Source of the DNA: Styela clava
Lineage: Eukaryota
Assembly (NCBI RefSeq): GCF_964204865.1
Contig: NC_135251.1
Span: forward strand, 17,236,001 to 17,300,000
Length of the DNA: 64,000 nucleotides
Direction: 5' to 3'
The notes under the pieces were generated by a model. It ran no database searches, had not been told where the DNA came from, and saw only the letters and a list, made by a program, of their open reading frames with translations. This document shows positions 8,417 through 62,037 of this stretch, piece after piece; positions within the stretch are counted from its first letter, which is position 1; every line of letters begins with the position of its first letter. The translations under genes were made by a program, and so were the position numbers.

Positions 8417-8944
8417 TAGGCTTACCATACGTCCCGGTTCAGCCGGGACAGTCCCGGTTTTAGCATGTTTTTCTGCCGTCCCGGCGATAGACTTAAATGT
8501 CCCGGTTTTGCAGTATGACAGTCATAATAGTTTTTCTATTCGATAATATTACAAAAAAAATTATTTTTAATGGAGGCAGCCGATTTACCAATGATTTGCG
8601 TCTCACTTCATGACATGAAGTATGAACCATGCGTTAATTTAACACCCAACTGTAATGTCGTTGAATCATCAAAATGCCGGAAACAAAGTGCAAGTTTTCT
8701 AATGAGTTTAAGAATGAGAACAATTCCCATTATTTGAAGCGAAGGCCAATAGAAAGAGAGAGTTTATTTTTATTTGTCAAACCGAGGATTTCGTAGTAAG
8801 ATTTACAGCTAATTTTGATGCCTGCAATCTACCCACAATGGTAGGAAAACGTTTAAACTATTACTAACCCCCAGAATCGAACCAAGTTTGACTTGTCCAA
8901 TCCGCGCCGTCCCGGTTTTTGGCTTCAGAGATATGGTAAGCCTA
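8417..8944. mobile_element. Non-autonomous hAT element (528 bp) that contains the left breakpoint of the triplication
   Basis: TIR TAGGCTTACCATA / TATGGTAAGCCTA, perfect 8-bp TSD CTTATTCC (8409-8416, 8945-8952), subterminal GTCCCGG repeats. Only its right 298 bp recur at 26433-26730 and 44219-44516. Confidence 0.9.
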
Positions 8945-9117
8945 CTTATTCCCCATTCTTGACGTCTGTGCTGGGACCAACTCGTTCAGATCAAATATAG
9001 AGGACTTGCACGGGTCACGTGACTTTGTTACTGGACGGCAATAAAACAAAATCGTCCATTTGGCTCCTGTCAGTTGCAAGTCGGATTATACGTTTCCGTT
9101 TTGTTTGGCTGTTGAAA

Positions 9118-10073
9118 ATGGTTATTTCGTATTGTTCCGTTGGCTGCACGTATAGTATAGACTATAGACAACGAAATGGATCTTCAGTTATATTCCCCTG
9201 TTTTCAAAAGATCCGGAACGTCGCGCAATGTGGATATCATCTATTGGCAGATCTGCTTGGTGTCAAGTCCAGAAGCCATCTCACTTGTGTTTAACTGTTT
9301 GCGGACAGCACTTCGTTGATGGTGAGTCATCATGTGCCGTTATCGAATTTTTAAATATTCATAAGCTCCCTCATTTCAATGGAAAGCAGATGACAAACTA
9401 CTGTTATTGGTAGGCCTAGGCGTAGGCCTACTTGCAGACTTGACTCGTGTAAGGTATTAATCAATAATTGCCATAAGGTATTGTTTTCCTAGTTAGCAGG
9501 TAATCTATTAGTAATTGTGAAAAGTTGAATAGATAACTAAAGTTTAACGCCAGTGCTCATGCAAAAAATAACCAGAATTCAATTGAATTCGCCATCTAAG
9601 AGTACGCTCGCCACCGCATCTCTGATCCCACTGGGAGTTTCACAGCTTCCAATCCCATGCGGGGATAGTTATGTGCGAGTGGATTGCAGCTCTCCTCCCA
9701 CTGAGGGTGGTTCACACGACCGCTGGTCGATTACGACATCCCCCACCATCAAGTATATGCTTCTAAAACAAATAACTGGCTAACTAATCCCGACATAGAA
9801 ATGGTAATCGTACGATGCTGCACCTTGCAATCTGTCCCCAACCAATGATAAATTCTATCCTGAAAACTACCCACATTGGTAGGCATAGTTGCGTTTTAAA
9901 TTGAAAGAAATCTTCATTAATGGTCAAATTGGTCTGATTGTTTTGTTAGTTAGCAGGTAATTTATTACTGATCTGATACACAAACTTGGCACTGTCAAAT
10001 GATGATAAGTGTTTAATTTATTTTCAGGAAAAAGGGAAGATAACCCATTATCAGCTGCTTATATGTCCCATCG
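9118..10073 (+). pseudogene. THAP zinc-finger domain remnant with two exons and frameshifts (also at +17786 and +35572)
   Basis: ATG at 9118; exon 1 ends GAT G|GTGAGT (9321); exon 2 starts TTTTCAG|GA at 10028 (phase 1 matches). C2CH signature, W, HF and terminal YVPS motif present. Frameshift near 9205 and an AT duplication near 10061. Confidence 0.8.
9600..9862 (+). mobile_element. Probable decayed SINE nested in the THAP intron (also at +17786 and +35572)
   Basis: GC-richer island with a degenerate B-box-like GCTTCCAATCCC (~9645-9656), TAAC repeats and an ATTCTATCCT tail. It lies between direct repeats TAGTTAGCAGGTAAT at ~9490 and ~9947. Boundaries approximate. Confidence 0.45.
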
Positions 10074-10260
10074 AAACACATGTAAGATGGCTTCTGGACT
10101 TGACACCAAGCAGTTCTGCCAATACAATAGGCAATGGATGATATCCACATTGCGCGACGTTCCGGATCTTTTAAAATTAGTGGAATATAACTGAAGATCC
10201 ATTTCGTTGTCTATACTATACGTACAGCCAACGGAACAATACGAAATAATCATTTTCAAC

Positions 10261-10463
10261 GGTGACCGTACATTTGAACCTACGTACATTTGAACCCATG
10301 TGTATATTCGCGAGTTCAATCTATATGCGGGTGCTAAACCCATGGGTTAGGGTTAGTATGAGTTCAAATATCCGTAAAACAACAAAAATTTTCATAGGTG
10401 CAATAGTGTGCAGGTGCAATCGTCGTGGGTTCAAATGTACGTGGGTTCAAATGTAATGGAACC
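10261..10463 (+). mobile_element. 203-bp MITE family A (Mutator- or Merlin-like) inserted in the right arm of the THAP fold-back; copies at 28047-28249 and 45833-46035
   Basis: Termini GGTGACCGTACATTTGAACC ... GGTTCAAATGTAATGGAACC, 9-bp TSD ATTTTCAAC. The empty site is visible in the left arm. Confidence 0.9.
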
Positions 10464-10769
10464 ATTTTCAACAGCCAAACAAAACGGAAACGTATAATCC
10501 GACTTGCAACTGACAGGAGCCAAATGGACGTTTTTGTTTCATTGCCGTCTAGTAACAAAGTCACGTGACCCGTGCAAGTCCTCTATATACTACTACGTTC
10601 AGATACATCTTTAAAATATTTTTACTTGGTGTTTCATATCGCCGATAAGCGTTTAAAGCAAATACTAACCAAATGGAGCTTGTATATGTATGCAAATTTG
10701 TTTCAATATATATAAAATACATTGTGAAGATCAACAATGCATAAATATTTATGTAGGTAGATTCTAGAC

Positions 10770-11076
10770 CAGGCACGCTTTTTGGACCGGGTGCCAAAAA
10801 ATTTGTCTACTTAGACTGGCGGCCATGTAAGTGTGACGTAAAAAGTTACATTTTATAAACAATATTTACACTGTTACAAAAGCAAAAGTGGAAAACAGTG
10901 AGCCTCGTGCCAAAACGAAATATAATCCCAATCTCAACAAATTCCTTGAGCTATTTTTAGCCCAACATCAAAATTTGGTTTTAGTTTGGTTGTGGCAGCA
11001 TCATGCGGGCCAGACTGAACTACCCAACGAGCCGGATTTGGCCCGCGGGCCGTAGTTTGCTCATGTCATATGTCTG
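10770..11076. mobile_element. hAT (Charlie-like) MITE; copies at 28556-28862 and 46342-46648
   Basis: CAG...CTG termini, subterminal GCGGGCC/GGCCCGCGGGCCGTAGTTTGC, 8-bp TSD TTCTAGAC / TTGTAGAC (NTCTAGAN-type target). Confidence 0.75.
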
Positions 11077-11567
11077 TTGTAGACGGTTTGCACAAACGAG
11101 TTTGACTAACATTCACTGCCCAGGACGTAACCTGCAACAGCTGAGCTATGGCGCCATTGGTAACCAATTGCCACAGTTGCCCAGATATGAGGATATTTCT
11201 TTATACATTGACTTTGAATTAGATTCTGTGTAGCAACTAATAAAAACGACGGGAATGTTGTTAAACTACTGAGAGGGGTTCTACGTACAATTTGTGAAAG
11301 GCGTAATCATGTTCATTCTAACATTTGTCGTGAGTTGCATAAGCAAATACTCAAACTCATTCACCTAAACTCTCTCTACAAACAGTCACTAAAAATGTTG
11401 AGGTTTTCTATATACAACTTCTCTCTGTGTACTACGCTCTGTACAAGCAACTAAACGAAAATATGGGTGAGTTCATTCACATACCCCTTGAGAGCCAAGC
11501 TTCACCGACTGGCGCTACGTATAGATTTGCAAACCTATAACACAAGCCTACATTTTCTGGTTTTTAG

Positions 11568-11577
11568 TTTATTTATT
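11568..11577 (-). terminator. Candidate polyadenylation signals of the RGS3-like gene (also at +17786 and +35572)
   Basis: Two overlapping AATAAA on the minus strand ~75 nt after the TAA stop. Confidence 0.5.
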
Positions 11578-11651
11578 CAATCAATAGACGAAAGAACATA
11601 TGCAGGAACAAATGACGAAATTGGCAAAAAAACACATCTAAACATTTAAAT

Positions 11652-14600
11652 TTAATTTTGTGAAATATATCGTCTGTAAGAATCAGATTCCATCAACCGA
11701 AATATATGATCTTGAGCTTCCTGGAACATTTCTGAGGTTGGATTCTGCAGCTTTTCTGTTATCATTGAACGTATTTTTGATGTAATATTAACCTGAAAAT
11801 ATAAAAGATTATCCATTAGGCATTGACGTATTTGAATAATTTGGAGCCGGAAGGTTTTTTTTAGACTGAATCAGAACAAACCAACCAACAACCAAATCAT
11901 ATGGGTGGCAATGTTTTCATTGAAAATGGAGGGACCTGAGCCCTGGCAAAGACCAATGAATGACTCGCTCCAGCAGCAGTAGATAAAATTTCAAGGATAT
12001 GATGGATGTTTCGCCTATATATATGGCCGTTCACTCAAAAATCAAAAAAAAAATAGTGCTGATAAAGACTGAATGTCAAATCATACCTCACACTCTGCAT
12101 CAGAGTGGATATATTTTTTGTAGATCGCAGACGCAAGTTTACGTTGTTTTGTTGTCTTCTTATTTTTGTAACTTTCACATTCAGTCCAAAAATCAAGATT
12201 TTCCTCACTGTGCTCTATTGCAAGAAATGCGCGAAAGGAAGCACATTTACCTTCAAAAAATAAAAAATATACATTAATATATATATATGTATTTTCAAAA
12301 CAATGAGAGAGAAAGGTAATAAACCTAACCGCCGAAGAATACTGGCAAATGATAAAATGTAGATTATGTGAAAACAGTTTTAAAACAGAATATTACATTA
12401 ATTCGTATCTGATTATAACCAGGATTAATCTAGGTTTAATTTAAAATCGATTCACGGGAATATTCTACAAACCTTTATCTTTCAAAATAGCTAGCAGTCC
12501 ATTCGCTGACGAAGAATTGGAGGAACAAGACGATACGTTAATAATATTACTTTCCAGTGCTGTGTAGCCTTTCTTCTCCTCGTTCTTATGTTTTCTTGAC
12601 TTGACACGACTAAATTAATGTTGAAAAAATATATTTGAAAAACATTAGAATATATGAGGTAAGAAATGTATCAGCACAAGTGACACAAATAGTTTACACT
12701 TATACAAGTTAAACTTTTTTTCATTTTCAACTTCAATCATTAACATAAAAATAAACTAGCAGCAGCACAGAAGCTACAAGATTTGTGTATGATTTCATAT
12801 GTCAGTTATAAGAAAAGCAAAGAATCTTTTCACTTCAGTAAATGCCCATGTACTGTTCCTAGCAAAAGTGTGTATGCTTCATTTAACTTATCTAGGCTAT
12901 TGCATTTGATCAATACAGGGCACAGGGTTACTAATTCAACAAACCGACTTATGGAACCCTGTACTACAAACATCCAAATATTTCGATTCAAAGTAAGATA
13001 TATTTATGTTTGTCACGGTAAGAGTCAAATAAGGTAAGAAAAAAGACTTTTGTTACTTACAATATCTTTTTAATCTTTTCTGTTTCGATCCAATCAATTT
13101 TACTCGAAATATTTTTGTTGTTTTGTAGTTCTTCTTTCGTTTTCAAATCTGATTCGGAAGAACATGACCGACTTCTTATTCGTTTTGGATCAACATCGCT
13201 TGATGACGTAACACTAACGATTTCCACGCGATCATTGTCATAATTTTGCGACCTCGAGCTATTTATTTCAGATGACACGATATCACTCGGTGCCCCAAGT
13301 TCGAATTTTTGAGGAAAATCTGAAAATGAAAAAATTAAATAATGCAAACTTCCTCACATCGACCCAAGGTGAACGCATGCTTGAATCTACTTACCAATGA
13401 AATCAGGATAATATAAGGTGAACTTCTCATTCCCAGCCTGTAACAAAGAAATTATAATGTTTATATATTATATTTTTTTAATTTATTGGTTCAGTTTGTT
13501 TAAACGTATAGATTCGTCGGAATATTTATAAGATTGCCTTTGCATTGTGCTGTGACGCCGCTTCAATAATAAAAAAATCGAATATCGGAACAATTAGTTT
13601 ATAAAATCTACATACCGATTTTTGCATACGAAAACTCTCCGACTTATTAAAATATCTTTTGCTGCTTGTGCGTTCATATCCGTTAATGCTTCTTTTTGCA
13701 GATCGTCGAAGAATCGGCGATTCACATCCGGGAACCATTTGTCTCAATTGCGCGAGTTGTTTTTTCCCGTCATGATATGTTCGTCTTCGGACTATTCTCG
13801 CCGACTTTTGCAAATTTGCACCGTATGTAACGGACGCCAAACACAGCGGTGTACCGGGAGTGTTGCTAGGACGACAGGGAATGGAGTTACCAGCATATAA
13901 CGGGGGCTTGCAAATTTGAAATGTCTGTTCCTGCTCTTCAGTCAAAAACACATCATCATTATCTTCATCTTCAAATTGTATTGGTTTGATTTGGTGCTTC
14001 ATATCATGTTGTGGTCTGAATGGCGTTTGCTGGTCTATATCATTTTCTATATATCTATACTTTTGTAGTTTTTCTCTCGTTGTAATGAATTGCAAGTTAT
14101 TTTGCGCTGATGTCCTTAGTCGATGTTCGTTCAATTTACGCTTTTTGTGTCGAACACCACCTTTTCTATTAAGTTTACGTTTATATCCGCCTTTTGGTGT
14201 ATTGTTCAATTCTCGGTTGTTTCGATGACTTCTTTGAATTTTCAGCACTACAACACCGGAACAAGATCTATATAGAGGCAAAATACCAGTTGGCAATTTT
14301 GTTCATTGCAAAAATATATAAATAATAACCTAAAAATAACACTTACCTCAGTAAATTTTGAAATTCAAAATTAGTCCGGTTATTAACAATTGACCCATTG
14401 ATTGACAATATTACGTCTCGTTCACGGAGTCCGACGGAATAAGCTTGTGATCCTGAAAATAAAAGGTTTATATACATTTTAATCAAAGTAAACTAGTAAG
14501 AAACGCAAGGCAACAACTCTCTTAGGCTTTAATAAGAAAAGGAGCATTTTGAGTAAAATAGATCAGCTGGTATGTTTTGTATTGATATCGTACGAAAATT

Positions 14601-17600
14601 TACACATCTGACTAAGCTTTAAAAGTCTCATGGTTTTGTGACAAAATTAGTTGCTTGTGCATTAGGATTTTTCGGAAGCGACATCAACTTATTATAAAAC
14701 TCACTCGACTCGGTTAGAACCCCTTACCTTCTGTGACTGATGAAACACATGGTGGCGATTGTGTTTGTGCGCCAAATTGAACATCTCTTACAATGGCATT
14801 AGTCGATAATTGGATCTAAAAATAGAAATATTTTTATTGAATAATGTTATAATATATATTGTCTATCGGCAGAAGAACCGTTCTATGTATCGTACATGAG
14901 TTTGACAGTGTTTGGGGCATAATTAGTGATGAAAGCTTGATGCGTCCGACGTTTCCCAATTTCATGCTTTGAGATTAATAGTAATTGTTCCGAACTAACC
15001 TCCTTATGTTCGATCATTTTTCTGCTCGGCGTGAATCCAGCTTGTGATTTGTCATTTTGTGATGTCTCTGCTGGGAACTGATTATAATTCATTGTCTTTA
15101 CCTTGTTTTCTCCTGATGTCAGAAATGAGAAAGTACATTTATTTATTCATTTTATTCTTATATTATTACGAGTCCCGAGTGAATGAGAGATTTCAAACAA
15201 ATTTGAATCCATGCGTTCCAAGCAAGACTTTTCCGTCGACCTACTTACCAACACATCATTTGCATAAAATATGCGATAAAATTAACATTTTGTATACACT
15301 AAGTTATCATATTTGCATAATAATTATCTTACTGCTGAGGCTTTGATTCGGTTTCACAGCAAGATGTTTTCGTCGTCCTATGTTCTCACCGAGCAAGTAA
15401 TATGAACCTTGAATTATCTGTGAAATAATGTTGAATTAATTGGAATGACTGACATGACACTGACATTTTAAGCAGAAACGACGTATTACCGTTGCTTGAG
15501 ATCAAAACAATAACGATTTGGAATATGTGGTTGTTCGTTTAAAATCGAGAATAACAGTTCAATTTTTGAATATTATTACGTTAATAATAAAAATGATGCA
15601 AGTTACCTCATTATTCGTCATAAACTTCCGAAGTCCAAAGCTTGTGCATCCTTTAAAATTCACCGGAGTCATAGCCTGTGACCAGACTTCAATCAGCAAT
15701 CTTCTATTCAATGCCATCCGAGACAAGTTACTAGAATTTTAATTTTTTCATGTAAATTTTTAATTTAAAACCTAAACTATTAGATCAAGATATTCTTTTT
15801 TTTTCAGCAAAAGGTTCGGCCATTCCGTGTATGTCAAAACTTGACAAATTATAATCGTAATGGTATTATCAGTACTTACAAAGAGACCGTCTCGTGGAGA
15901 ATGGTTTCTTTTGCTGCCATGTGCACCTTCATGATATGTTCAGCATGTGTTTCGCTCTTTTCCGAAATTAGGGAAATCTAAAAATAATATGCGATTACTT
16001 TCACATGTTACCTGAAATTTACGACGAAAATCTACCAGTAAATTTTTGTTGAGCAATTTTAAAATAACAAAGTCCAGATCCTGATTCTAGCATTCATATT
16101 ATCAAATTATCCATTTACATAATATATCTTATTGTCGCGATACAAATGAACATACCAGCATACGTCACTTGATTAGTACAGGTAAGGACGTAATTAAGTT
16201 TGGACTTACCTTTATGTAAATGCTGGATCCTATTGAAGACAAAATGTTTCTAATTCCCAACAGAGTGACAGTCAACTTCTTGGCCGTTCCACATGCCACC
16301 AATTTGATTTGACCTTGATAAATATCAGGTATTATTCCATGATTGAATTTTTGTTTTAGACGGTTAGAAAAAACATGACAAAATAGATTTCGATACATAA
16401 TTCCGAAAGCATCAAATCATGGAAAAAAAATTAGGCATCGCTTAAAAATTGAACATTATTCAATATACTACAAATCATCACTTACCTCGCATTGTTAGGC
16501 GCCAATAACAACAACGTTCCTCCTCACAAATTGCTTAGATAAAATCAGTAAGAAATAATTAAATATAAAACTGCAATGACAACGCATATGTTTAAACATA
16601 CGTCGACAATATTACGAATTAAGTGAAGGTTTGTCTCTGGCACGCTAAATCATATATATCTTTCGCTGATCTGTCTCCTGGATTCGTTTGCTAATACTAT
16701 TTGCACGGAAGCCTGACCTAGGTATCAAATGTCACCTTTCTACTTCGCGATACGTTTCTCCTTGACTAAGCAGTCTAAATAATCGTGAAAAGTAGAACTG
16801 CAAACACTTCGTTGTTTGCGAAGGAAGATGAATCAAGTGACGTCAAAATTTCAAAGCGGATTACACTGCTGGAATCTTTTTGAACCAACTAAATTTTTTG
16901 ATGATTTCTGACATGCTGGGTTTTCTAGTGCTGAAATTTTGTGGCGATGCATGGCGGAAATTGTTTTCTGCTATTCACTGGCAGACTTTCCGTTTTAAGT
17001 TCGGATACATCAAGCCGGGTCAAACAGGATCCACATCTAATAAGCCATATAATACTCGAATATTTTACTTTCACTTAAATTTACATGGTAACCCATTGTC
17101 AAACTAAATCCGAGTTTATTATTTTCACTGCAGCCGCCGTAATATTCCACAATATTATATATATATATTCAATACTTTCTCGATTCGCACTCAATAACTC
17201 TGGTCTAGGTTTAACCTGCCGGCACCCACATTTCAATGAATGAGATACTGTTGAAATCTTCAACTGTCGAAATTGAGAGTACTCAGAGATGTCAGACAGT
17301 GAAAACTGTCTGTGACCCAAATCACGTCAGCGAAAAAAAAGAAGCAACATCTGCCTCAGTTTATTCATATCAAGAGACAATAGCCAACACAACGGGTTGC
17401 CTGAGTGGCAAGGCGGTCATTATACCGTGAAATGAAAACTTCCCAGCAAGGCAGGTGTGCCAAGTTTTTTACCTTTATGTATAATTATGTGTTATCATAC
17501 GCTGATTACTTGCAGTTTTACTTTTATAATGCCAGATTAGCGCACACGTTAAGTTTCACTATCACGAAAAGTCAAATCCTTAATGAACGGGATAACTATT

Positions 17601-19529: not shown

Positions 19530-20138
19530 TGTAACATATGTGGTGACATAAATTTTGTGGATCTTGTTTATATAACCGATTATATCTTTCGTGGGAAAAT
19601 TAAAAAACTGATAAGAAATGTGTTATACATCTTATCAGCAATTGAAAGGATTGCTGATCAATCCTTTCATTTAGTAAAATTAAAAGAAATTCTCGATTGC
19701 TACTCAGATAGTACTTGATAACGATTACCGTATCTTTTAAAAATTTGCACTCAGGTTGAAAATATAGACATAGATATCAAGACAAAATGTAATCAAAGGT
19801 ATGAAATGTTGATCAAATCAAGTAAAAATTTGAGTGTTCCGAAACTTTGTAATTACATTCGCACATATATTTTGTTATATCATGATATACAACTGAAAAG
19901 CCAGAAAAGTTTTCCGGTATAAAAACCTATTTTTCGCGACACAAGAGTACCTAACGTAAGGCAAGATGTAGCAGAGCGACAATGCTGCTAAATATTAGGC
20001 GAAACTTGTTTTTATGCCTGTTCTCTAATTGAACACTCCAAGTAAGTGGTCGAAACCTAGACATTTTGTTTCTGTTGACCTGAGCAATGAGCATCTCATC
20101 AATACACGTGCATTTGATTAAGTGAATATATATATACT

Positions 20139-20314
20139 CAGTGGTGGGATTCAGCCGGTTCGCACCGGTTCTATAGAACCGTCTCGTGGAATTTTATGAG
20201 TACAGCGAACCGGTTAGCATCCCTGAAAAAACATGACTTTTTGTAACAGAAACGGCTGAAAAATATGACTTTTGTGATGGAACCGGCTGACAAAAAATTT
20301 GAATCCAACCACTG
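20139..20314. mobile_element. hAT (Tip100-like) MITE ~600 bp upstream of the RGS3 ATG; copies at 37925-38100 and 55711-55886
   Basis: TIR CAGTGGTGGGATTCA / TGAATCCAACCACTG, GAACCGG subterminal repeats, perfect 8-bp TSD TATATACT. Confidence 0.9.
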
Positions 20315-20599: not shown

Positions 20600-20718
20600 A
20601 CCAAATGACCACAAAATTCGATCTCCTAGATTGCTTCGAAAATGGCCTGTCTCCTGGCAGAGAGGTGTCACCTTTCCTCGCGATTAATACCAAAGCAAGC
20701 AAAAATTCCGCATACCTA

Positions 20719-50200: not shown

Positions 50201-53200
50201 CATGGTTTTGTGACAAAATTAGTTGCTTGTGCATTAGGATTTTTCGGAAGCGACATCAACTTATTATAAAACTCACTCGACTCGGTTAGAACCCCTTACC
50301 TTCTGTGACTGATGAAACACATGGTGGCGATTGTGTTTGTGCGCCAAATTGAACATCTCTTACAATGGCATTAGTCGATAATTGGATCTAAAAATAGAAA
50401 TATTTTTATTGAATAATGTTATAATATATATTGTCTATCGGCAGAAGAACCGTTCTATGTATCGTACATGAGTTTGACAGTGTTTGGGGCATAATTAGTG
50501 ATGAAAGCTTGATGCGTCCGACGTTTCCCAATTTCATGCTTTGAGATTAATAGTAATTGTTCCGAACTAACCTCCTTATGTTCGATCATTTTTCTGCTCG
50601 GCGTGAATCCAGCTTGTGATTTGTCATTTTGTGATGTCTCTGCTGGGAACTGATTATAATTCATTGTCTTTACCTTGTTTTCTCCTGATGTCAGAAATGA
50701 GAAAGTACATTTATTTATTCATTTTATTCTTATATTATTACGAGTCCCGAGTGAATGAGAGATTTCAAACAAATTTGAATCCATGCGTTCCAAGCAAGAC
50801 TTTTCCGTCGACCTACTTACCAACACATCATTTGCATAAAATATGCGATAAAATTAACATTTTGTATACACTAAGTTATCATATTTGCATAATAATTATC
50901 TTACTGCTGAGGCTTTGATTCGGTTTCACAGCAAGATGTTTTCGTCGTCCTATGTTCTCACCGAGCAAGTAATATGAACCTTGAATTATCTGTGAAATAA
51001 TGTTGAATTAATTGGAATGACTGACATGACACTGACATTTTAAGCAGAAACGACGTATTACCGTTGCTTGAGATCAAAACAATAACGATTTGGAATATGT
51101 GGTTGTTCGTTTAAAATCGAGAATAACAGTTCAATTTTTGAATATTATTACGTTAATAATAAAAATGATGCAAGTTACCTCATTATTCGTCATAAACTTC
51201 CGAAGTCCAAAGCTTGTGCATCCTTTAAAATTCACCGGAGTCATAGCCTGTGACCAGACTTCAATCAGCAATCTTCTATTCAATGCCATCCGAGACAAGT
51301 TACTAGAATTTTAATTTTTTCATGTAAATTTTTAATTTAAAACCTAAACTATTAGATCAAGATATTCTTTTTTTTTCAGCAAAAGGTTCGGCCATTCCGT
51401 GTATGTCAAAACTTGACAAATTATAATCGTAATGGTATTATCAGTACTTACAAAGAGACCGTCTCGTGGAGAATGGTTTCTTTTGCTGCCATGTGCACCT
51501 TCATGATATGTTCAGCATGTGTTTCGCTCTTTTCCGAAATTAGGGAAATCTAAAAATAATATGCGATTACTTTCACATGTTACCTGAAATTTACGACGAA
51601 AATCTACCAGTAAATTTTTGTTGAGCAATTTTAAAATAACAAAGTCCAGATCCTGATTCTAGCATTCATATTATCAAATTATCCATTTACATAATATATC
51701 TTATTGTCGCGATACAAATGAACATACCAGCATACGTCACTTGATTAGTACAGGTAAGGACGTAATTAAGTTTGGACTTACCTTTATGTAAATGCTGGAT
51801 CCTATTGAAGACAAAATGTTTCTAATTCCCAACAGAGTGACAGTCAACTTCTTGGCCGTTCCACATGCCACCAATTTGATTTGACCTTGATAAATATCAG
51901 GTATTATTCCATGATTGAATTTTTGTTTTAGACGGTTAGAAAAAACATGACAAAATAGATTTCGATACATAATTCCGAAAGCATCAAATCATGGAAAAAA
52001 AATTAGGCATCGCTTAAAAATTGAACATTATTCAATATACTACAAATCATCACTTACCTCGCATTGTTAGGCGCCAATAACAACAACGTTCCTCCTCACA
52101 AATTGCTTAGATAAAATCAGTAAGAAATAATTAAATATAAAACTGCAATGACAACGCATATGTTTAAACATACGTCGACAATATTACGAATTAAGTGAAG
52201 GTTTGTCTCTGGCACGCTAAATCATATATATCTTTCGCTGATCTGTCTCCTGGATTCGTTTGCTAATACTATTTGCACGGAAGCCTGACCTAGGTATCAA
52301 ATGTCACCTTTCTACTTCGCGATACGTTTCTCCTTGACTAAGCAGTCTAAATAATCGTGAAAAGTAGAACTGCAAACACTTCGTTGTTTGCGAAGGAAGA
52401 TGAATCAAGTGACGTCAAAATTTCAAAGCGGATTACACTGCTGGAATCTTTTTGAACCAACTAAATTTTTTGATGATTTCTGACATGCTGGGTTTTCTAG
52501 TGCTGAAATTTTGTGGCGATGCATGGCGGAAATTGTTTTCTGCTATTCACTGGCAGACTTTCCGTTTTAAGTTCGGATACATCAAGCCGGGTCAAACAGG
52601 ATCCACATCTAATAAGCCATATAATACTCGAATATTTTACTTTCACTTAAATTTACATGGTAACCCATTGTCAAACTAAATCCGAGTTTATTATTTTCAC
52701 TGCAGCCGCCGTAATATTCCACAATATTATATATATATATTCAATACTTTCTCGATTCGCACTCAATAACTCTGGTCTAGGTTTAACCTGCCGGCACCCA
52801 CATTTCAATGAATGAGATACTGTTGAAATCTTCAACTGTCGAAATTGAGAGTACTCAGAGATGTCAGACAGTGAAAACTGTCTGTGACCCAAATCACGTC
52901 AGCGAAAAAAAAGAAGCAACATCTGCCTCAGTTTATTCATATCAAGAGACAATAGCCAACACAACGGGTTGCCTGAGTGGCAAGGCGGTCATTATACCGT
53001 GAAATGAAAACTTCCCAGCAAGGCAGGTGTGCCAAGTTTTTTACCTTTATGTATAATTATGTGTTATCATACGCTGATTACTTGCAGTTTTACTTTTATA
53101 ATGCCAGATTAGCGCACACGTTAAGTTTCACTATCACGAAAAGTCAAATCCTTAATGAACGGGATAACTATTTAATAATCGCTAATGATGATTGGCAGAA

Positions 53201-56200
53201 GTCTGCTTACGTAGAATCAGACTGTCATAATAAATAAAACAATAATTAATACACTATATGTCGAGCAACAAAACGAATGATTACGGTATTTACGGTCTAT
53301 TGTGACAAGACTTGTCGTACGGTTCCATTACATTTGAACCCACGTACATTTGAACCCATGACAATTGCACCTGTATGCTATTGCACCTATGGATTTTTTT
53401 TTGTTTCACGGATAGTTAAACCCATACTAACCCTAACCCATGGGTTTTAGCACCCGCATATAGATTGAACCCGTGGATATACGCATGGGTTCAAATGTAC
53501 GTGGGTTCAAATGTACGGTCACCTTGTCGTACGCAATAGCGAAATTTTCAATCGAAAGCCAAGAAACGAATTATGTGACGTAATCATTCCGTAAAGAAGG
53601 AGCTTCAGGGTTATTGATATTCAGCGACATACATTGCCAACTTTTCGGTTTTACATTTTTGGTTTACTCTGACATCTTGCATTCCATATCCTTAGGACGG
53701 ACTAATGGGCTCTGCGAGATCTAGCAGAATAAAGACATTCCGATGACGCCGTTTCCGAAAATAAATCATTTTGGCATGCGTATCAATCGCACCTGTTCTT
53801 GTGTTATTTGCTTTGGGGAAATCATATAAGTCGGAGGCGCACGTTGATTTTTTCAGTTGGAGTTTCCGTAATTATCGCCAACAATCTTAATTTTTCGCAG
53901 TTTCGACAACTATCAACAGGTGAATGTCAATACTATCCAACCCGATAATTATCGCGCTTAGACTCTTGATTAATTACATCAGACACATCTTTATCTTATT
54001 GAAAGTACTTTTGTTTCTCGCAATGTCAAATGACTAAGCGTTTGGCCTAAATAACTAATCGTGATTTACGGACTAATATCAGGTCTCAACATTTTGTAAA
54101 TTTTTCTTCATCATTTTCTATCATAACCTATTTCTTATTTCTATCTACAGCGAAATTACGGTTACGGACTATACAGTTACGGACTACGGTATTGGCAAGA
54201 TCTGAAATAACATTCGCCCAACACTACTTTCAACAAACTTGCGGTCGAACAATCCACATTGTAGAAACGTTAACGTAAAAGGTTTCGACAATCAACAGCA
54301 GTTTTACGACTGATAGTGCGACTTTACAACGCCCGAACTCTAAAGAAATGTTCTCTTGCATGTTGAACGTCGTTCTAAATTGCCATATTTTCATAAACTA
54401 CATTGACAGAACGTAATTACCCAGTGTATGACTAATGCAATTAAATACACGTAATGTTTGTTCAAATAATAATAGTAATACCTTGATTGGGAAGTTTGTT
54501 GCTTATGTTTTTATTACTCTCTACTTTTCTCTTCTTTGGAGTAGGGAATACTGAAGATTCTGAATCCGTACTGTTTGTGCTTCCGCGCATTCTACGCTTG
54601 ATCATTTCTTGATTCAATGTACTTCCATAATAGACTTCATTAAAATTTGCATATTCGTCGCCAGATGATTCGGAGTCATGGTCCGTCATTCTGAAATTTC
54701 AAAATGCTATTATGTGTTGTATTCGGCGGTTTAGAATTAAACTTTTCTCTGACAAAATCGTGGTGAAGTAGTTAGATCTATTGATTTCATTGCTGCCTGT
54801 TGGGTGAGCATATTACCGTCATGCTACGGATTGTCTTATCATTAGCTAGTGGGTTGTATACTAAGTGTAAAATTGAAACTTCAAAAATTTGAGAAATAAA
54901 TTATAAATTTCACCTTTGATAAACATCAGCGTAAATCTTTCTTTTCGTAACTTCATCTTCTGAAGAAAGACTTGATGTTGTGCTCTTTCGAATTTCATCC
55001 CAATCAAATGATAACTTTGGGCATATCGTTTTCAAGTCAAACTTGAATGAAATCGGTTTTTTGTTTTGTAATACAGTAAATTCATTCGTTTCGCTCGCCA
55101 TTGTAACATATGTGGTGACATAAATTTTGTGGATCTTGTTTATATAACCGATTATATCTTTCGTGGGAAAATTAAAAAACTGATAAGAAATGTGTTATAC
55201 ATCTTATCAGCAATTGAAAGGATTGCTGATCAATCCTTTCATTTAGTAAAATTAAAAGAAATTCTCGATTGCTACTCAGATAGTACTTGATAACGATTAC
55301 CGTATCTTTTAAAAATTTGCACTCAGGTTGAAAATATAGACATAGATATCAAGACAAAATGTAATCAAAGGTATGAAATGTTGATCAAATCAAGTAAAAA
55401 TTTGAGTGTTCCGAAACTTTGTAATTACATTCGCACATATATTTTGTTATATCATGATATACAACTGAAAAGCCAGAAAAGTTTTCCGGTATAAAAACCT
55501 ATTTTTCGCGACACAAGAGTACCTAACGTAAGGCAAGATGTAGCAGAGCGACAATGCTGCTAAATATTAGGCGAAACTTGTTTTTATGCCTGTTCTCTAA
55601 TTGAACACTCCAAGTAAGTGGTCGAAACCTAGACATTTTGTTTCTGTTGACCTGAGCAATGAGCATCTCATCAATACACGTGCATTTGATTAAGTGAATA
55701 TATATATACTCAGTGGTGGGATTCAGCCGGTTCGCACCGGTTCTATAGAACCGTCTCGTGGAATTTTATGAGTACAGCGAACCGGTTAGCATCCCTGAAA
55801 AAACATGACTTTTTGTAACAGAAACGGCTGAAAAATATGACTTTTGTGATGGAACCGGCTGACAAAAAATTTGAATCCAACCACTGTATATACTGTATAT
55901 ATACATGGCATATACTTGGACTATGTTTGCAAAATCGAAGAATATAACAATGCTCATGGCAGCTATTTTTAGGTATAGAATCACGGCGGTGGTTCGCAAC
56001 CAATGGGGATTTAGGGGTTGTTAACGGGAAACAAACTCACACACAGTAAACACAATGAAAATCATAATACATGACACAGGGAGAAGAAAGCTGCCTATGC
56101 TGTCACAACTACACAAGAGTTTGATGAAACGTCCTGATGGTGTGATGTGTCATAATTGCGAAACGGTCGACACCAAATGACCACAAAATTCGATCTCCTA

Positions 56201-59200
56201 GATTGCTTCGAAAATGGCCTGTCTCCTGGCAGAGAGGTGTCACCTTTCCTCGCGATTAATACCAAAGCAAGCAAAAATTCCGCATACCTAGATCAAAATA
56301 ACGAGCACAATGGTGATAAAAACAACGAGCACGTGGTGATCAAAACAACGAGCACACGCCACACATCAATGAAGTATTTCTGGAATGGCCAACCAGTCAG
56401 AGACTAAGAGCCGCATTTCGTACTTCATTACCGCGAAGAGCCACATTATAAACAAGAGCACATGAACATCAGATATACCTTTATTCATCTCTGCTAGAAT
56501 GATAGTTTTTTGTGAATGTCACTAACCACGAACTTTCTGTAAGCCACGCCCTTCCACCAGTTGGTTGGCATAAAAACAGTTGAACATCCGACGCACAGCA
56601 CGACTGTTTGAGCGTGACTGAATACCGTCGTAATCTTATAGCAACCTGGGCACTTTACATCCATGAAATACGAGTTTGGTTCTTGTGACATCTGGTCCCT
56701 ACCATTAAAGCGCAATTGAGCTGGTCTTCGTCATAAAGATTTGATCATCTTCAACTCAGTTGCAGCCTCATCTGAGACTAGAGGGAATTTCAGGGGTGTG
56801 CTATTGTTTGATTTCTTCCAAGCATTATTCTTTGAAAACAAGTATAGAATAGGCATTGTGGAGATGAGAACGTTTCTAGCTCGCCCAACAAAAAAAAGGG
56901 ACAACAATATACTACGCACAATTTTATTGGAATGTGCTTCGGGAGCACATTCTCCAGGTCCCTTGGAAGTTTTTATATACTGTATATGTAATTAGTTTTT
57001 TACTCTTCCTGTTACCAAGTAACCAATATGGGTCAGCATAATAAATCACTAAAGATAATATGTTTCGATTATAAAATGCAGTTTTTTATTTTATCATTTT
57101 CATCCGCATCCGAGGTAAATGTGCTTGTCGCTGTCTTTCTGGTATTTTTTTCCAACTTTGCCTTTTTACACGATGGTACTTGTAACCTGTGAAAGAAAAT
57201 TTTAATACAACATTTTTGTAATCTTATAAACCAATGGTTAAATATAGGGAACTTTGTTATCACAATTTTGATGTTGGACATTGACAAACGAGTCGAACTA
57301 ATAGCGTACTCGAAATTTTATTTTGAAATGATGGCAATTTTCTCAAAGTGTTAATAGCACATCATAAAACATAGCTCTGAATAAGAAGCAACGGATATGT
57401 GAGAAGCTATCGTGTATGTAAATGAAACACATTCTAGATTTACAATGTGTCCTGATTATTGGGCCCGAAGTGTTAATATGGTGTGTTTTGCTAAATTGTT
57501 GTTGTTGACTTGTTGTCTCCATAAAATAATGCACCAATCGTTTTCAAATTTACAGCACTTAAATATCGTTTATTCCTCTAGAAGGCTATCACTTTTATAT
57601 TTTCCCGACGCCTATAAAATTCGATATTTCATGCAAAATTTTGTTATCACTGCAAATACTGCGCCGCCGCGTGGCGTCACTTCAAATCTCCCTCACATCT
57701 TTCCGACAAAGTCTTTGCTGTCTTCTCAACTCCAGTACTACCAATGTTAATGCGGCGGTTAGACTTGATTTGAAGCTTTCGAATGATCATATAACGGATT
57801 TCATTCTAAGTCTCATGGGTACTGCAGTTGGTATTCGTGTTCGTATATTTGAGCATTGTTCTTTTGTTTGGAAAAAAAATTATGGTTTATTGGACCGCAA
57901 TTGTAATTATATATATTAGACAACTTCAAAATGCGCTGTAAAAAGAAAATAACCATGTTTTTGAGCATACCAGTCAAACAGATTATTACTAAACAAAAAG
58001 GGTACCCTCGTAGTATGTGATCCAAGATGGCGGACACCGGAACGTAGTATGTGTACCAGGTAGGGTTAGGCCATAATTTCAGGTACAAATACTACGGGAG
58101 TCACTTGGATAGTCCCCGAACTCGTAATAGAACTAAACTAAGGAAAACTGGATTAAAATTATGGCCTAACCCTAACCTGGTACACATACTATGTTCAGGT
58201 GTCCGCCATGTTGCTTCACATACTACGGGAGCGCCACAAAAAGTGTGAGAAGTACGTTACCTATATTTTTCTAATGCAAGCGACTCCTCCAGAGTTTCGG
58301 GAAGGGGTAGATCTTTTGTTTCGGGCAACAAGAGCGTTACAATTGACGCGACTAGAGCAATACCGCTTAAAATCAGAAATGGAACCAACTTCGAACTTTC
58401 ACCTGTAAATTACGAATAATACCACAATATGCTAGGTTCGGTACATATTAATACAGCGCCCAGTTGTGGCAACTCATATAACTGTAATCTTATCCTATGA
58501 AGAGTGAATAATCTGGGTCAAGCTTACCAGTGAAAGCAATAAACGGCGCCATCAAACCACCAAAACGGGAAAGCGTTGCAGAGAATCCAAGTGCCGTGTT
58601 GCGGAGTTTTGTTGGAAAAAGCTCAGCTGGATACAAAAAAATCATTGCCATAGTAGATGAAATAAAAACCTTTCCGAGCATTGCAAACGCAATACTTACT
58701 GCGTTATCTGCAATAGGAAGTAAGATGATCAAGCTCATTTCAAACAACTTTGGAATAGCATTTCGAGTCTTTCGCTAAGCTATTCATGAAAATCCACAGT
58801 TTATCAACCAGAACAATATTCGCTACATATCTGATACTTTTTACCATATCATTACACAGTAGGCCCACGGTATTATGCAGTAAGTTTAACTCACAGTTGC
58901 CAAACACCGGGCAGAGTATTGAGCATAAACATGATATTGCATATGCTGCGGATAACGTAGATCTTCTACCAAATTTTTGCAGAAAATAAGGAGCAAAAAT
59001 CCAGCCAGGAAGTTCTGCAGCGGCGGAAATAAAACAGTTCCAGTATTTGTTTCCTTCAAGGTTTGACGTATTAAATCCAAAACCATAATAAGATGTCAAA
59101 GTCGCGGTGCTATAACAATAGGAAATCAGGAGTTAACTAAAAATCTCCGTTTCTGACAAAGCTGTCCAATCTACGACAAACATTATTTATCCTATGTAAT

Positions 59201-62037
59201 TTTAAAGTGAAAAGTCTTACATAATCCAACTGATAATGAAGCATCGCTTCAGCAATACTCGGTTTCTTAAAAGTATGATGAAATGAGTCTCCTTTGAATC
59301 CTTACTTTTTGTAGTCTGAATTGTGAATAGATTCGGTCAACACTAGTTTTAACGTGCTCTTTAATAATTGAAAACTAATACCTACACTAGATTTTGCGGG
59401 TGACGAAATCAAAAATATATTTTGCCTCAAAAGCTTTTGATTTGTCGTATTTTTTCGCATGATGAATTTCATGACTTTTGTAGCTTCAGCAATGCGACCC
59501 TTACTTGCAAGCCATCTTGGAGATTCAAAAATAATCCTTCATAACAAAATAAGTAATTATATATAGGAAAACATATTTAACATGATGAATAAAATGGTTC
59601 GAATAAGCTGGTAGGCGTGGTTATTTATTTGGATTTCATCTCCCAAAATACCATGACGGAGACAGCCACGTTGTAAAACCAAATCTAGTATGGCTATGAT
59701 TGTTCTCAAACATACTATTGTGAAATCATTTTTTTGTTTTCAACCTCTTAACATCGGGCTCAAGCTTAAATTCGCTATTTCAACTTACATTATTTGAAGA
59801 CTTACCAACAAGAAGGAATGTACAGAATACCAATCAAGCCAACGACTCTCAAAATCCATCGCCAATCTTGACATAGATATGCGATTGCTGGGACCAGCAT
59901 GTACGAGAAAGATTCAAAAGAATAAATAAGACAGCTGATTGTAGCTCGTTTGTCAGTTTTGACCAATTCTTGTACTGATAAATTAAATTTATATGATAAA
60001 TTCCGACAAGGCAAACCAGCTACATTGCTGAAAAGAACAGGGACCTCGTGACTCAGTTTCGGAGTTTCGAGTTTTGAAAAATGTGTAGCGTGATGCTTTA
60101 TTTCCCTGTTTATTTGTCTTGCGGTGTGTATGACCTACAATTTCGAACAACGAAATTAATCTTTTGTACAATATTTAAAAAAATGCAAGTTGTCAAATTG
60201 GGCATAAAGAGAGTTAATTTGGTAACACTCTTGATGCAATGTATGTTTGCATTAAACTAAAGCCCTAAAACAATAATAATAAGTAATTTATACCTACAAG
60301 AATTTGATTATGTCTTACCATATAAAAATGCTGTACAAAATGCTGCTGCGTTGATTGCTCCTAATAACGTAAACCATATGACACAAGATGCAAAGTTTGG
60401 CGCAAAGCTATAAGCGATCATCAGTGACGATATAATCATACCGTAAATAATTGTTGGCTTCTTCCGTCCAAACCTGGAATTTCGTAAGAGTTATTTTCGA
60501 TTAATGGTACGTATAACTGGCGTAGTTTTGTGCAACAAGGCTTTGGGATTTATCTTTAAATGTTCAAATGTTTCTCCCAGTGATGAGAATGTCCATGGAG
60601 TCTATAGAGGCGAAAAATAGCAGCTAGAAGATTATTACTTTTTAAAAGTTTTTAAGAGTCAATTTTGACTGCTGTGTTTCCATTCATGGGAACACTTTTT
60701 ATAAAATATGGGCATATGACATTTTATTGTGTCACTTTTTTATTATATGCACGTGACCATCGTGCTAATGTTTTTGAGCATTCTACTTTTGTTTCCTAGT
60801 TAGTTGTTTGTAATCAAGTTGGATTTCAAGAGATGTGCAGTGTTTAGCAAATCGCTGTAGCCTACTTTATAATCGGCGTTTTTACTGTAATGTTAAAATT
60901 TCTAGAAAAGTAAAAATGTTTTTGTTTTGAGAGACATTTGTTGCTTAAAATAAATCTTGCATTCAACTTCATAGTTTTTTTTATGGTATGCAAATTGAAC
61001 AAACCTGTCAACTATCATCCCTGCAATCAGACCACTAAACATTGGCCCTGCTGAAAATCCAAGCGTCAGAAGAATTCTTTGCCAATCATCATTACAGACC
61101 AAGTCAAACTAAAAACGAATCATGACTCCTGGTTGAGCTGAGAGGATGACTATTTAGGAAATATAAAAACACCATTTACAATCTTTTATCGTCGACTCAT
61201 ATAATATTATTTCTTAGCAGATGATTTGAAGGAAAATGTAATTTTAAATGCAGTTAATAGATTGCTCTTTACCTCCTCTGTCCCAGTTTTTACCCCATCT
61301 TTTGCATTGTATACCCATCCGTCTTTGCAATATTCATTAGCATAGCTCCCGGTGGTGTTAAGTGTGATGTTGTGGTTTGAAACATTGACATACCTAAATT
61401 TAACTGTGACGTTTTACGTTTACCGGATATCCCAAAAAAAATCTCTTCTAGAATTGAACATTGTTGTATATATATATATATATATATGGTGACCGTACAT
61501 TTGAACCCATGTACATTTGTACCCATGCGTATATCCACGGGTTCAATCTATATGCGGGTGCTAAAACCCATGGGTTAGGGTTAGTATGGGTTTAACTATC
61601 CGTGAAACAAAAAAAATTCCATAGGTGCAATAGCATACAGGTGCAATTGTCATGGGTTCAAATGTACGTGGGTTCAAATGTAATGGAACCTATATATATA
61701 TATTCGCATAATATCATGTTTGAGGCAGCTACTGAATTATGATGCCACAAAAGCCAACAGAATTTAAGATCGAAACGCAAATACAATGAAATAAACATAG
61801 CATATATCATCAAAAACATACCTTTTGCATTTTGAAAATTCATTCCCATTCGGTCCCTCATGTGGAATGTAACGTAACAAGATTGATCTCGAGATATTCC
61901 TTTCTATCTGAAAACATGTTTGCATTATTTCAAATGTAGTTAAAATAATATAGAGGATGTCGGCTCCGAGGGCCACAAAATTATTTTTGCATTGTTCGCG
62001 AGCCACAATAGTGCCAAGAATAGGTAAAACAGTGCAA
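44219..62037 (+). repeat. Tandem segmental repeat, copy 3 (30 bp longer; distal 3.3 kb diverged)
   Basis: Offset +35572 up to ~59.6 kb, then +56, -18, -6 and -2 bp indels. Ends at GTGCAA (62037), followed by unique TACAAAAC. Confidence 0.98.
47224..55101 (-). CDS. RGS3: RGS3-like gene, copy 3 (complete)
   Basis: Copy 1 shifted by +35572; no differences seen. Confidence 0.88.

What the first reader, a model, noticed from the sequence alone, without database searches (positions are those of the whole stretch)
8647..62037. Very young 3 x 17,786-bp tandem amplification that triples one intact gene, a C2-PDZ-RGS (RGS3-like) regulator
Seen: three head-to-tail copies with identical junctions, identical ORFs and identical (TA)n lengths between copies 1 and 2. 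Between 44.2 and 58.7 kb I found only one substitution (G>T at 46393), from spot checks rather than a full alignment. RGS3-like is the only complete gene in the unit, with upstream region and polyA signal. Knowledge: RGS3 proteins are GAPs for Gi/Gq alpha subunits. Inference: a recent copy-number variant that could triple the dose of a GPCR-signalling brake. The second junction was probably copied from the first by unequal crossover or rolling-circle replication.
Basis: partly seen in the sequence, partly recalled or inferred. Interest (0 to 1): 0.75.

Follow-up and report, generated by a model that had tools for sequence, protein, structure and literature searches.

The report
Young 17.8-kb triple tandem duplication
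The assembly really holds three head-to-tail, almost identical 17.8-kb copies that each carry a whole RGS3-like G-protein-brake gene, but the reads I could reach did not show whether the animal truly has three copies, so for now it is an ordinary, unverified copy-number variant.

Summary
Copies 1 (8647-26432) and 2 (26433-44218) are identical at all 17,786 bases. Its last 3.3 kb has 9 substitutions and 4 indels. Both internal junctions are the same non-homologous join, with 3 bp of microhomology (CAA), between two unrelated dispersed repeats.

The unit carries, all on the minus strand:
- a PDZ + R4-type RGS gene; the C2 domain is only weakly supported;
- a frameshifted RPS27 pseudogene;
- an SLC22-like transporter that lacks exon 1, which lies only in the right flank.

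The reads did not settle reality. My single read-laying run covered a junction without a single-copy flank. The Hi-C reads were about 1x. No listed contig bridged the junction. The call did show that copy 3's tail letters are alleles present in two other samples.

The most likely reading is a real, very young microhomology-mediated duplication, expanded by unequal crossover and private or polymorphic. The copy number is unverified. This is a known kind of event and of low interest. The scan's only other notes on it come from this same window; the word look-ups I made turned up none on other DNA.

The parts
8647..26432 (+). Copy 1 of the 17,786-bp unit
   Evidence: Identical to copy 2 at 17,786 of 17,786 positions. 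The left boundary is set by the first mismatch, at 8646.
26433..44218 (+). Copy 2, flanked by the junction on both sides
44219..62037 (+). Copy 3 (17,819 bp, counting the 3-bp CAA that it shares with the right flank)
   Evidence: It has 1 substitution in its first 14,530 bp, and 9 substitutions plus 4 indels in its last 3.3 kb.
26420..26445 (.). Junction 1 (26432|26433): unit tail joined to unit head, with CAA microhomology
   Evidence: Both internal junctions have the same 80 letters. CAA also follows the tail at the right flank (62035-62037).
44206..44231 (.). Junction 2 (44218|44219), the same letters as junction 1
8408..8949 (.). Dispersed repeat B (about 535 bp) that contains the left breakpoint (8646|8647)
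   Evidence: Copies lie elsewhere at 98% identity (C8 and two on C3) and at 74-94%.
61954..62415 (.). Dispersed repeat A (about 460 bp, at least 37 copies at 89-93%) that contains the right breakpoint (62034-62037)
   Evidence: A and B share no significant similarity; the best match is 12 nt at E = 0.024.
11577..19622 (-). RGS3-like gene, copy 1. RGS exons lie within 11655-11870 and 12084-12392, a PDZ half-domain exon at 14346-14492, and candidate C2 exons at 15562-15738 and 16168-16416. The stop is TAA at 11652-11654 and AATAAA starts at 11577. The 5' limit is approximate.
   Evidence: Pfam RGS at 3.4e-10 and 6.7e-13, PDZ at 1.1e-3. Nearest PDB hits are R4-type RGS proteins. PDZ PDB hits. Weak C2 hit. 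Stop and polyA signal.
29363..37408 (-). RGS3-like gene, copy 2 (copy 1 + 17,786)
   Evidence: Identical to copy 1. RGS matches at the shifted places.
47149..55194 (-). RGS3-like gene, copy 3 (copy 1 + 35,572)
   Evidence: No difference from copies 1 and 2 inside this range. RGS matches.
20925..21158 (-). RPS27-like pseudogene fragment; also at 38711-38944 and 56497-56730
   Evidence: Pfam S27e at 6.8e-18 but covering only profile positions 1-36 of 55. The frame shifts after ...CVGCSTV. It is one of 17 S27e-like matches in the genome.
22688..25803 (-). SLC22/MFS-like transporter, exons 2 to last, copy 1 (no exon 1); copy 2 lies at 40474-43589
   Evidence: MFS_1 and Sugar_tr exon hits. The exon at 25277-25480 best matches OCTN2/OCT1 residues 133-168.
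58260..61413 (-). SLC22-like exons 2 to last in copy 3, the only copy that continues into exon 1
   Evidence: Coordinates shifted according to the indels.
62572..62775 (-). SLC22-like exon 1 (begins MLSIDIESIF...), in the right flank only
   Evidence: ORF. The best PDB hit is OCT1 residues 4-58 at E = 0.14, weak but correctly placed.
58749..62037 (+). Divergent tail of copy 3, holding 9 substitutions and 4 indels
   Evidence: The copy-3 letters are seen in contigs of samples S1 and S2.
59623..59678 (+). 56-bp stretch present only in copy 3
   Evidence: Contigs of X2 and X4 carry 35 and 86 unaligned letters at the matching place.

Best explanation
This is a real and very recent tandem amplification on the assembled haplotype. 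The proposed history has four steps. (1) A non-homologous join formed between a break 84 bp inside dispersed repeat A (in intron 1 of an SLC22-like gene) and a break inside the unrelated repeat B (downstream of the RGS gene). It used 3 bp of microhomology (CAA), as in replication template switching or end joining, and gave a two-copy direct duplication. (2) Unequal crossover or sister-chromatid exchange between the two identical copies added a further copy carrying the same junction. (3) The last 3.3 kb of the distal copy, together with the right flank, comes from another allele. This arose either by ordinary recombination with a non-duplicated haplotype or by a haplotype switch in the assembly. 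(4) Each unit carries a whole PDZ-RGS (RGS3-like, R4-type) gene with its flanks, so the dose of a presumed G-alpha GTPase-activating protein could rise. The two proximal SLC22-like copies have no exon 1 or promoter and are probably silent. What is shown: the anatomy, the junction, the gene content, and the allele status of the tail letters. What is inferred: the order of events, expression, dose effect, zygosity, and that the count of three is right.
For: Copies 1 and 2 are identical at 17,786 of 17,786 positions, and copy 3's head has 1 difference in 14,530. The two junctions are identical, with CAA shared by the unit head and the right flank. The breakpoints lie in two different dispersed repeats with no similarity to each other; such a specific chimeric join is hard for an assembler to invent twice. 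There is no N or gap between the copies, whereas false duplications are typically separated by gaps (PMC9516828, passages). Copies 1 and 2 show 0% divergence, far below the 1.72% heterozygosity reported for Styela clava (PMC7540406, passage), so they are not two haplotypes laid side by side. All three copies share G at the place matching 44317, where three runs of other samples show A and three other repeat-B copies have A. This fits an amplification on one particular haplotype. One contig that fits a single other locus (the C19 copy of repeat B) has depth 5.93 in X1, against 19.1-20.1 for the unit. Equal depth is unlikely (p about 0.005) if that locus is homozygous.
Against: No read or contig was shown to cross the junction. 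None of the 24 listed pieces, out of 85,232, bridges 44218|44219, and no listed loose end, out of 1,008, sits there. No unit-versus-flank depth was measured, because my stretch had no flank. The Hi-C raw reads gave about 1.07x in the unique bins, against a nominal 5x per copy, and 0 reads at the variant sites. The majority letters flip between two runs of one sample: X1 shows copy-3 letters at 7 of 7 sites and X2 at 1 of 7. That fits a 1:1 ratio better than the 2:1 expected for three homozygous copies (likelihood ratio about 4 if the reads are long). In X4, contigs from other loci (667-1140) and the unit (810-1082) have similar depth, which hints at no amplification in sample S2, although that list is selected for support. 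Identical 17.8-kb copies are about as long as typical long reads, so an assembler can miscount them.
Confidence: 0.55

Rival explanations
1. The duplication is real but the copy number is wrong. The animal carries the junction, but with two copies (tail type 1/2, then tail type 3), or with more than three. The middle copy would then be an extra or missing turn of an assembly-graph loop through identical sequence.
For: Copy 2 has no letter of its own: it equals copy 1 throughout and copy 3 over 14.5 kb apart from one site. Its existence therefore rests on reads of at least 14.6 kb. The two tail types appear at roughly 1:1 in sample S1, since the majority flips between X1 and X2, as a two-copy homozygous array or a heterozygous single copy would give. 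Depth hints range from about 1.6 to 3.3 locus-equivalents, depending on the zygosity assumed for the calibrating contig.
Against: S1 and S2 are probably not the assembled haplotype: they show A at 44317, and one contig fits no copy in the assembly. Their ratios may therefore say nothing about the assembled animal. From general knowledge, not tested here, assemblers more often collapse than expand identical repeats.
Confidence: 0.25
2. This is a pure artefact. The locus is single-copy, and the junction comes from chimeric or concatemeric library molecules or from an assembly error. The two tail types would simply be the two alleles.
For: The junction was not seen in any read or contig listed. 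Both tail types occur in other samples as alleles, in a mosaic in S2 where 2 of 6 scorable sites carry copy-3 letters. The perfect identity of copies 1 and 2, including the TA repeats, is also what a re-used consensus would give. An earlier scan note (s1-817508, not checked by me) reports an identity between neighbouring genes seen only in this assembly.
Against: A precise join of two unrelated repeats with 3-bp microhomology, used twice, is typical of a biological rearrangement. There is no gap, N or contig end at the copies. The locus is 17 Mb inside a 31-Mb contig. Copies 1 and 2 do not show haplotype-level divergence. In 200 kb sampled around the window, no other near-identical block of at least 1.5 kb appeared, apart from a satellite.
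Confidence: 0.12

Closest known systems
Microhomology-mediated tandem duplications that are then expanded by unequal crossover. The replication template-switch and end-joining models of copy-number variants, and the insecticide-resistance gene amplicons of insects, are recalled from general knowledge and were not read here.
   Same: The copies lie head to tail. One novel junction is reused at every internal boundary. The junction has 3 bp of microhomology and no extended homology between the breakpoint sequences. Both breakpoints lie in repeats.
   Different: Neither the copy number nor the population frequency is verified, and no phenotype or expression data exist. The last copy's tail carries a different allele.
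Vertebrate RGS3 long isoforms (PDZ-RGS3, C2PA-RGS3). The domain layout is recalled. The PDB entries 2oj4 (RGS domain) and 3fbk (C2 domain) were seen only as hits.
   Same: The RGS domain is nearest to R4-type RGS proteins, including RGS3 at E = 2.3e-7. A PDZ half-domain exon lies upstream. One upstream exon's best PDB hit is the RGS3 chain 3fbk, followed by PKC C2 domains.
   Different: The C2 hit is not significant (E = 0.28), and Pfam C2 is not found. RGS5, RGS4, RGS18 and RGS16 score better than RGS3 on the RGS exon. No tree or full-length comparison was made. GAP activity is untested.
False duplications in genome assemblies (Ko et al. 2022, PMC9516828; passages read)
   Same: Adjacent duplicated genes in a single assembly of a highly heterozygous species. 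One copy's tail differs at allele-like sites.
   Different: There is no gap between the copies. Divergence between copies 1 and 2 is 0% rather than haplotype-level. A defined chimeric junction is present. The depth criterion could not be applied.

Membership tests
RGS3-like (C2-PDZ-RGS) regulator | RGS domain (Pfam PF00615) | tested here: met
   Two exons match at 3.4e-10 and 6.7e-13, covering profile positions 12-66 and 65-110 of 117. The same matches appear in all three copies.
RGS3-like (C2-PDZ-RGS) regulator | RGS domain of the R4 type and orthologous to RGS3 | tested here: inconclusive
   17 of the 24 PDB hits are R4-type proteins by my recalled classification (RGS1, 2, 3, 4, 5, 8, 16, 18). 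The best are RGS5, RGS4 and RGS18 (4e-9 to 8e-9), with RGS3 at 2.3e-7. This rests on one exon only, and no tree was built.
RGS3-like (C2-PDZ-RGS) regulator | PDZ domain N-terminal to the RGS domain | tested here: met
   The exon at 14346-14492 matches Pfam PDZ at 1.1e-3 (19.7 bits, below the 23.2-bit cut-off because only half a domain lies in the exon). By their names or my recollection of the families, the 60 PDB hits shown look like PDZ-bearing proteins, the best at 5.7e-4.
RGS3-like (C2-PDZ-RGS) regulator | C2 domain at the N-terminus | tested here: inconclusive
   Pfam finds no family for 4 candidate exons at E up to 10. None of the 103 genome-wide C2 matches lies in the unit. The exon at 15562-15738 has as its best PDB hit the RGS3 chain 3fbk at E = 0.28, followed by PKC C2 domains. 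The exon at 16168-16416 has no C2 hit.
RGS3-like (C2-PDZ-RGS) regulator | GTPase-activating activity on G-alpha i/q | not testable with these tools
   This needs a biochemical assay.
Recent tandem copy-number amplification | Head-to-tail copies with one reused novel junction | tested here: met
Recent tandem copy-number amplification | Junction without extended homology (microhomology only) | tested here: met
   Repeat A against repeat B: the best match is 12 nt at E = 0.024. CAA is shared at the join.
Recent tandem copy-number amplification | Read depth over the unit about N times that of the flanks | tested here: inconclusive
   One search covered no flank. One contig from another locus gives a ratio of about 3.3 in X1, with its zygosity unknown.
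Recent tandem copy-number amplification | Independent reads crossing the junction | tested here: inconclusive
   None of the 24 listed contig pieces crosses it, but 85,208 pieces are not shown. All unique contigs stop at 44171, where repeat A begins. Hi-C depth was about 1x.
False duplication of an assembly (criteria of PMC9516828) | Gap or unsupported sequence between the copies | tested here: not met
   0 N in 64,000 bases. The copies abut at a defined junction.
False duplication of an assembly (criteria of PMC9516828) | Haplotype-level divergence between copies (heterotype) | tested here: not met
   Copies 1 and 2 have 0 differences in 17,786 positions. Only copy 3's last 3.3 kb differs (0.27% substitutions plus 4 indels).
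False duplication of an assembly (criteria of PMC9516828) | Half or low read depth on the copies | tested here: inconclusive
   One search gave no usable baseline.

The most novel reading that the evidence does not exclude
A private or low-frequency triplication, less than about 10^4 generations old, of an RGS3-like brake on G-protein-coupled receptor signalling in an invasive sea squirt. It would raise expression about threefold. It would also place two promoter-less SLC22-like transporter bodies directly downstream of RGS genes on the same strand, where read-through could make RGS-transporter chimeric transcripts. That would be a fresh dosage and gene-fusion variant caught before any divergence, possibly under selection.
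Probability: 0.08. Interest if true: 0.5.

Novelty: new member of a known kind. Interest (0 to 1): 0.2.

Why it matters
If real, this is a clean, datable example of how a gene amplification is born. One microhomology join between two unrelated mobile-element relics is followed by unequal exchange. A complete signalling gene is tripled, and a neighbouring transporter gene is copied without its first exon. It would be a convenient marker for copy-number polymorphism in this species and a natural dose series for an RGS3-like gene. If it is an assembly miscount, it matters only as a caution against reading gene gains from single assemblies of highly heterozygous animals. In either case the kind of event is well known.

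Tried and rejected
1. RPS27 as a second complete gene in the unit: rejected. The match covers only profile positions 1-36 of 55. The frame shifts after ...CVGCSTV. Upstream letters do not resemble S27. The genome has 17 S27e-like matches.

2. Homologous recombination between the two breakpoint repeats: rejected. Repeats A and B are unrelated.

3. Haplotypes laid side by side as the source of copies 1 and 2: rejected, because they show 0 differences.

4. Dating the event from copy 3's differences: rejected. Those letters are alleles seen in samples S1 and S2. Only the identity of copies 1 and 2 was used. Zero differences give under about 8,400 generations at an assumed 1e-8 per site per generation, ignoring gene conversion.

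5. Depth calibration led nowhere firm. Contigs of other repeat copies range from 5.9 to 11.9 (X1), 11.4 to 43 (X2) and 667 to 1140 (X4). Their copy number and zygosity are unknown, and the listing is selected for support. Only one of them could be tied to a locus (the C19 copy).

6. X5 Hi-C reads: about 1.07x in 15 unique bins and 0 reads at the variant sites, so they were uninformative.

7. A base-rate survey of near-identical blocks was cut short, because the fetch from genomes returns 10 kb per stretch. In the 200 kb sampled with holes, the only hit was a satellite.

8. C2 domain: Pfam on exons, a genome-wide Pfam C2 search and PDB searches gave only one weak hit.

9. Literature. 'Styela clava' + 'copy number' found 18 papers, and none of the 10 listed deals with gene copy-number variants (listing only). 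'RGS' occurs 0 times in the main text of PMC7540406.

10. The organism name, Styela clava, comes from earlier scan notes and was not tested by me.

The large protein searches, structure prediction and the protein atlas were not used.
Full report
**What is in the sequence**

The window has no N. It lies at G000:C2:17,236,001-17,300,000, inside a 31.3-Mb contig of a 377-Mb, 380-contig assembly. The repeat finder shows families spaced 17,786 bp apart. Self-BLAST aligns 8647-41836 to 26433-59622 at 99.979% over 33,190 bp with no gap.

A full three-way alignment gives these results:
- Copy 1 (8647-26432) and copy 2 (26433-44218) are the same string, including every TA microsatellite.
- Copy 3 (44219-62037) differs from them by 10 substitutions and 4 indels.
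- The other 9 substitutions, a 56-bp insertion, an 18-bp deletion and two TA-length changes all lie between 58749 and 61953.

The unique parts of the unit occur nowhere else in the assembly. The assembly therefore holds exactly three copies and no alternative haplotig of this locus.

**The junction**

Both internal junctions read ...GTAAAACAGTG|CAACTGTAAT.... The left flank enters the unit as ...TTTAACACC|CAACTG. The last copy leaves it as ...ACAGTG|CAATACAAAA. The three letters CAA are therefore shared by the two parental sequences.

- The right breakpoint lies 84 bp inside a roughly 460-bp dispersed repeat (61954-62415), which has at least 37 further copies at 89-93% identity.
- The left breakpoint lies inside a different repeat of roughly 535 bp (8408-8949), with copies at 98% on C8 and twice on C3 and others at 74-94%.
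- The two repeats share nothing beyond chance 12-mers.

I did not test that note's 'hAT MITE' label.

**Gene content (all on the minus strand)**

I searched exon by exon only.

(a) An RGS gene.
- Two exons match Pfam RGS at 3.4e-10 and 6.7e-13, and the same matches recur in all three copies.
- The nearest solved proteins are R4-type RGS proteins: RGS5, RGS4, RGS18 and RGS16, with RGS3 at 2.3e-7.
- An upstream exon carries half a PDZ domain (Pfam 1.1e-3; the PDB hits shown look like PDZ-bearing proteins).
- The stop is TAA at 11652-11654, and AATAAA follows 75 nt downstream.
- The C2 domain is not verified. Pfam finds nothing on four candidate exons. None of 103 genome-wide C2 matches lies in the unit. 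The only support is that the exon at 15562-15738 has the RGS3 chain 3fbk as its best PDB hit at E = 0.28, followed by PKC C2 domains.
- No difference between copies falls within 11577-19622 or its equivalents. The three gene copies and at least 3.5 kb upstream of each are identical.

(b) An RPS27-like piece (20925-21158). It matches only profile positions 1-36 of 55 and then shifts frame. It is one of 17 such matches in the genome. I read it as a pseudogene.

(c) An SLC22/MFS-like transporter.
- Exons 2 to last lie at 22688-25803.
- The exon that begins the protein (62572-62775) lies only in the right flank. Its best PDB hit is OCT1 residues 4-58 at E = 0.14, which is weak but correctly placed.
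- The right breakpoint therefore sits in intron 1. Copies 1 and 2 of the transporter lack exon 1 and a promoter, and only the copy in unit 3 is whole.

The left flank holds TPR-like exons on the minus strand. This is my reading of the translations, not a family scan. The left breakpoint looks intergenic.

**Reads**

One search found four runs kept as Logan contigs (X1-X3 from sample S1, X4 from sample S2, one study) and one raw Hi-C run (X5, sample S3, another study).

I laid X5, X1, X4 and X2 on window 40201-46200, that is copy 2's tail, junction 2 and copy 3's head. This choice gave no single-copy flank, which I now regard as a design weakness.

- **X5.** It gave a mean of 1.07x over the 15 unique bins, where the letters read (1,890 million on 377 Mb) would nominally give 5x per copy. 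It gave 0 reads at the variant sites. It is uninformative.
- **The junction.** In X1, X2 and X4, the unique contigs all stop at 44171, where repeat A begins. None of the 24 listed pieces (of 85,232) bridges 44218|44219, and none of the 24 listed loose ends (of 1,008) lies there. The junction is therefore neither confirmed nor refuted.
- **Variant sites.** The numbers of scorable sites carrying copy-3 letters are given below. In S2 (X4), the copy-3 letters are at 41394 and 41424 only.

| Run | Sample | Sites with copy-3 letters | Contig depth |
|---|---|---|---|
| X1 | S1 | 7 of 7 | 19-20 |
| X2 | S1 | 1 of 7 | 36-38 |
| X4 | S2 | 2 of 6 | about 810-1080 |

- **The 56-bp indel.** Contigs of X2 and X4 carry 35 and 86 unaligned letters just left of 41837, where copy 3 has its 56-bp insertion.

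From this I conclude that copy 3's tail letters are standing alleles that recombine in the population. They are not mutations that followed the duplication.

The flip of the majority between two runs of one sample fits a 1:1 ratio better than 2:1 (probability 0.065 for X1 under a 1/3 share). This holds only if the reads are long and the sample carries the array, and neither is known.

All three runs show A at 44317, where all three assembly copies have G. One X2 contig (44274-44394, 2 other letters, no gap) fits none of the assembly's repeat-B copies. S1 and S2 therefore carry a head variant that is absent from the assembly, and they are probably not the assembled haplotype.

One X1 contig (depth 5.93) fits the C19 copy of repeat B: 3 substitutions in 44220-44311, with mismatches beyond both ends. 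Against it, the unit's depth of 19.1-20.1 is about 3.3-fold. Equal depth has p about 0.005, a ratio of 2 has p about 0.19, and a ratio of 3 has p about 0.52. This rests on a single 156-nt contig of unknown zygosity, so I give it little weight.

**Reading**

The join is specific, occurs twice and uses microhomology between unrelated repeats. No gap separates the copies. Copies 1 and 2 have zero divergence, in a species reported to have 1.72% heterozygosity (PMC7540406, passage; the species name comes from earlier scan notes, and I did not test it). These points argue against the usual false-duplication artefact, which shows gaps and haplotype-level divergence (PMC9516828, passages).

I think a real duplication is most likely: a microhomology-mediated first join, then unequal exchange that reused the junction. 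The distal tail would have been brought in by allelic recombination or by a haplotype switch of the assembler.

Zero differences in 17,786 bp put the last exchange under about 8,400 generations ago, at an assumed 1e-8 per site per generation (the rate is assumed and gene conversion is ignored).

The count of three is the weak point. Copy 2 has no letter of its own, and identical 17.8-kb units are about the length of typical long reads.

My probabilities:
- real and as assembled: 0.55
- real but miscounted: 0.25
- pure artefact: 0.12

**Comparison and verdict**

The mechanism matches known microhomology-mediated tandem duplications expanded by unequal crossover (recalled from general knowledge). 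The gene resembles vertebrate RGS3 in having PDZ plus an R4-type RGS domain. Orthology and the C2 domain are open.

I found no paper on this locus. Searches were listings only, and 'RGS' occurs 0 times in PMC7540406.

This is a new instance of a well-known kind of event, seen in one assembly with an unverified copy number. Interest is low unless population and expression data show a dosage polymorphism.

Noticed in passing
L030 and L031 (G000:C3:18509060-18510592 and 18486287-18487819): Two copies of repeat B lying 22.8 kb apart on C3 are 99.48% identical over all 1,533 bp fetched, including 500-bp flanks on each side (8 mismatches, no gap). This is probably another recent segmental duplication, somewhat older than the one in the window.
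   Followed up: partly
G000:C5, around 12.60-12.64, 13.87-13.92, 16.61, 18.79-18.87 Mb: 28 of the 45 exon-level RGS-domain matches in the genome lie in clusters on C5. This suggests a local expansion of small RGS genes, separate from the C2 locus.
   Followed up: no
window 44317 (equivalent to 8745 and 26531): All three assembly copies have G here. All contigs laid from three runs of two other samples show A, as do three other 98% copies of the repeat. This may be a private variant of the amplified haplotype.
   Followed up: partly
L015:4338-8241 (G000:C2:17160338-17164241): A satellite-like tandem array with a period of about 80 bp. Shifted self-matches are 84-89% identical over up to 3.9 kb.
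   Followed up: no
window 1310-4457, minus strand: Exons of a TPR-repeat-like gene in the left flank, for example ...AIENFNKALSVNPTDARSYRYKGH... This is my reading of the translations; no family scan was run.
   Followed up: no
window 8996-9645 (also 26782-27431 and 44568-45217): A roughly 650-bp element at the unit head has at least 36 further copies at 93-96% identity across the genome.
   Followed up: no
genome-wide: There are 17 RPS27-like (S27e) matches. Several have internal stops or cover only part of the profile, so this genome carries many RPS27 retrocopies or relics.
   Followed up: no
run X5 on window 40601-43600: The Hi-C run labelled as the same species covers unique sequence at only about 1x, where 5x per copy would be nominal, while dispersed repeats are well covered. 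The cause is unknown; it may be the library's nature, sample divergence or other DNA in the sample.
   Followed up: no
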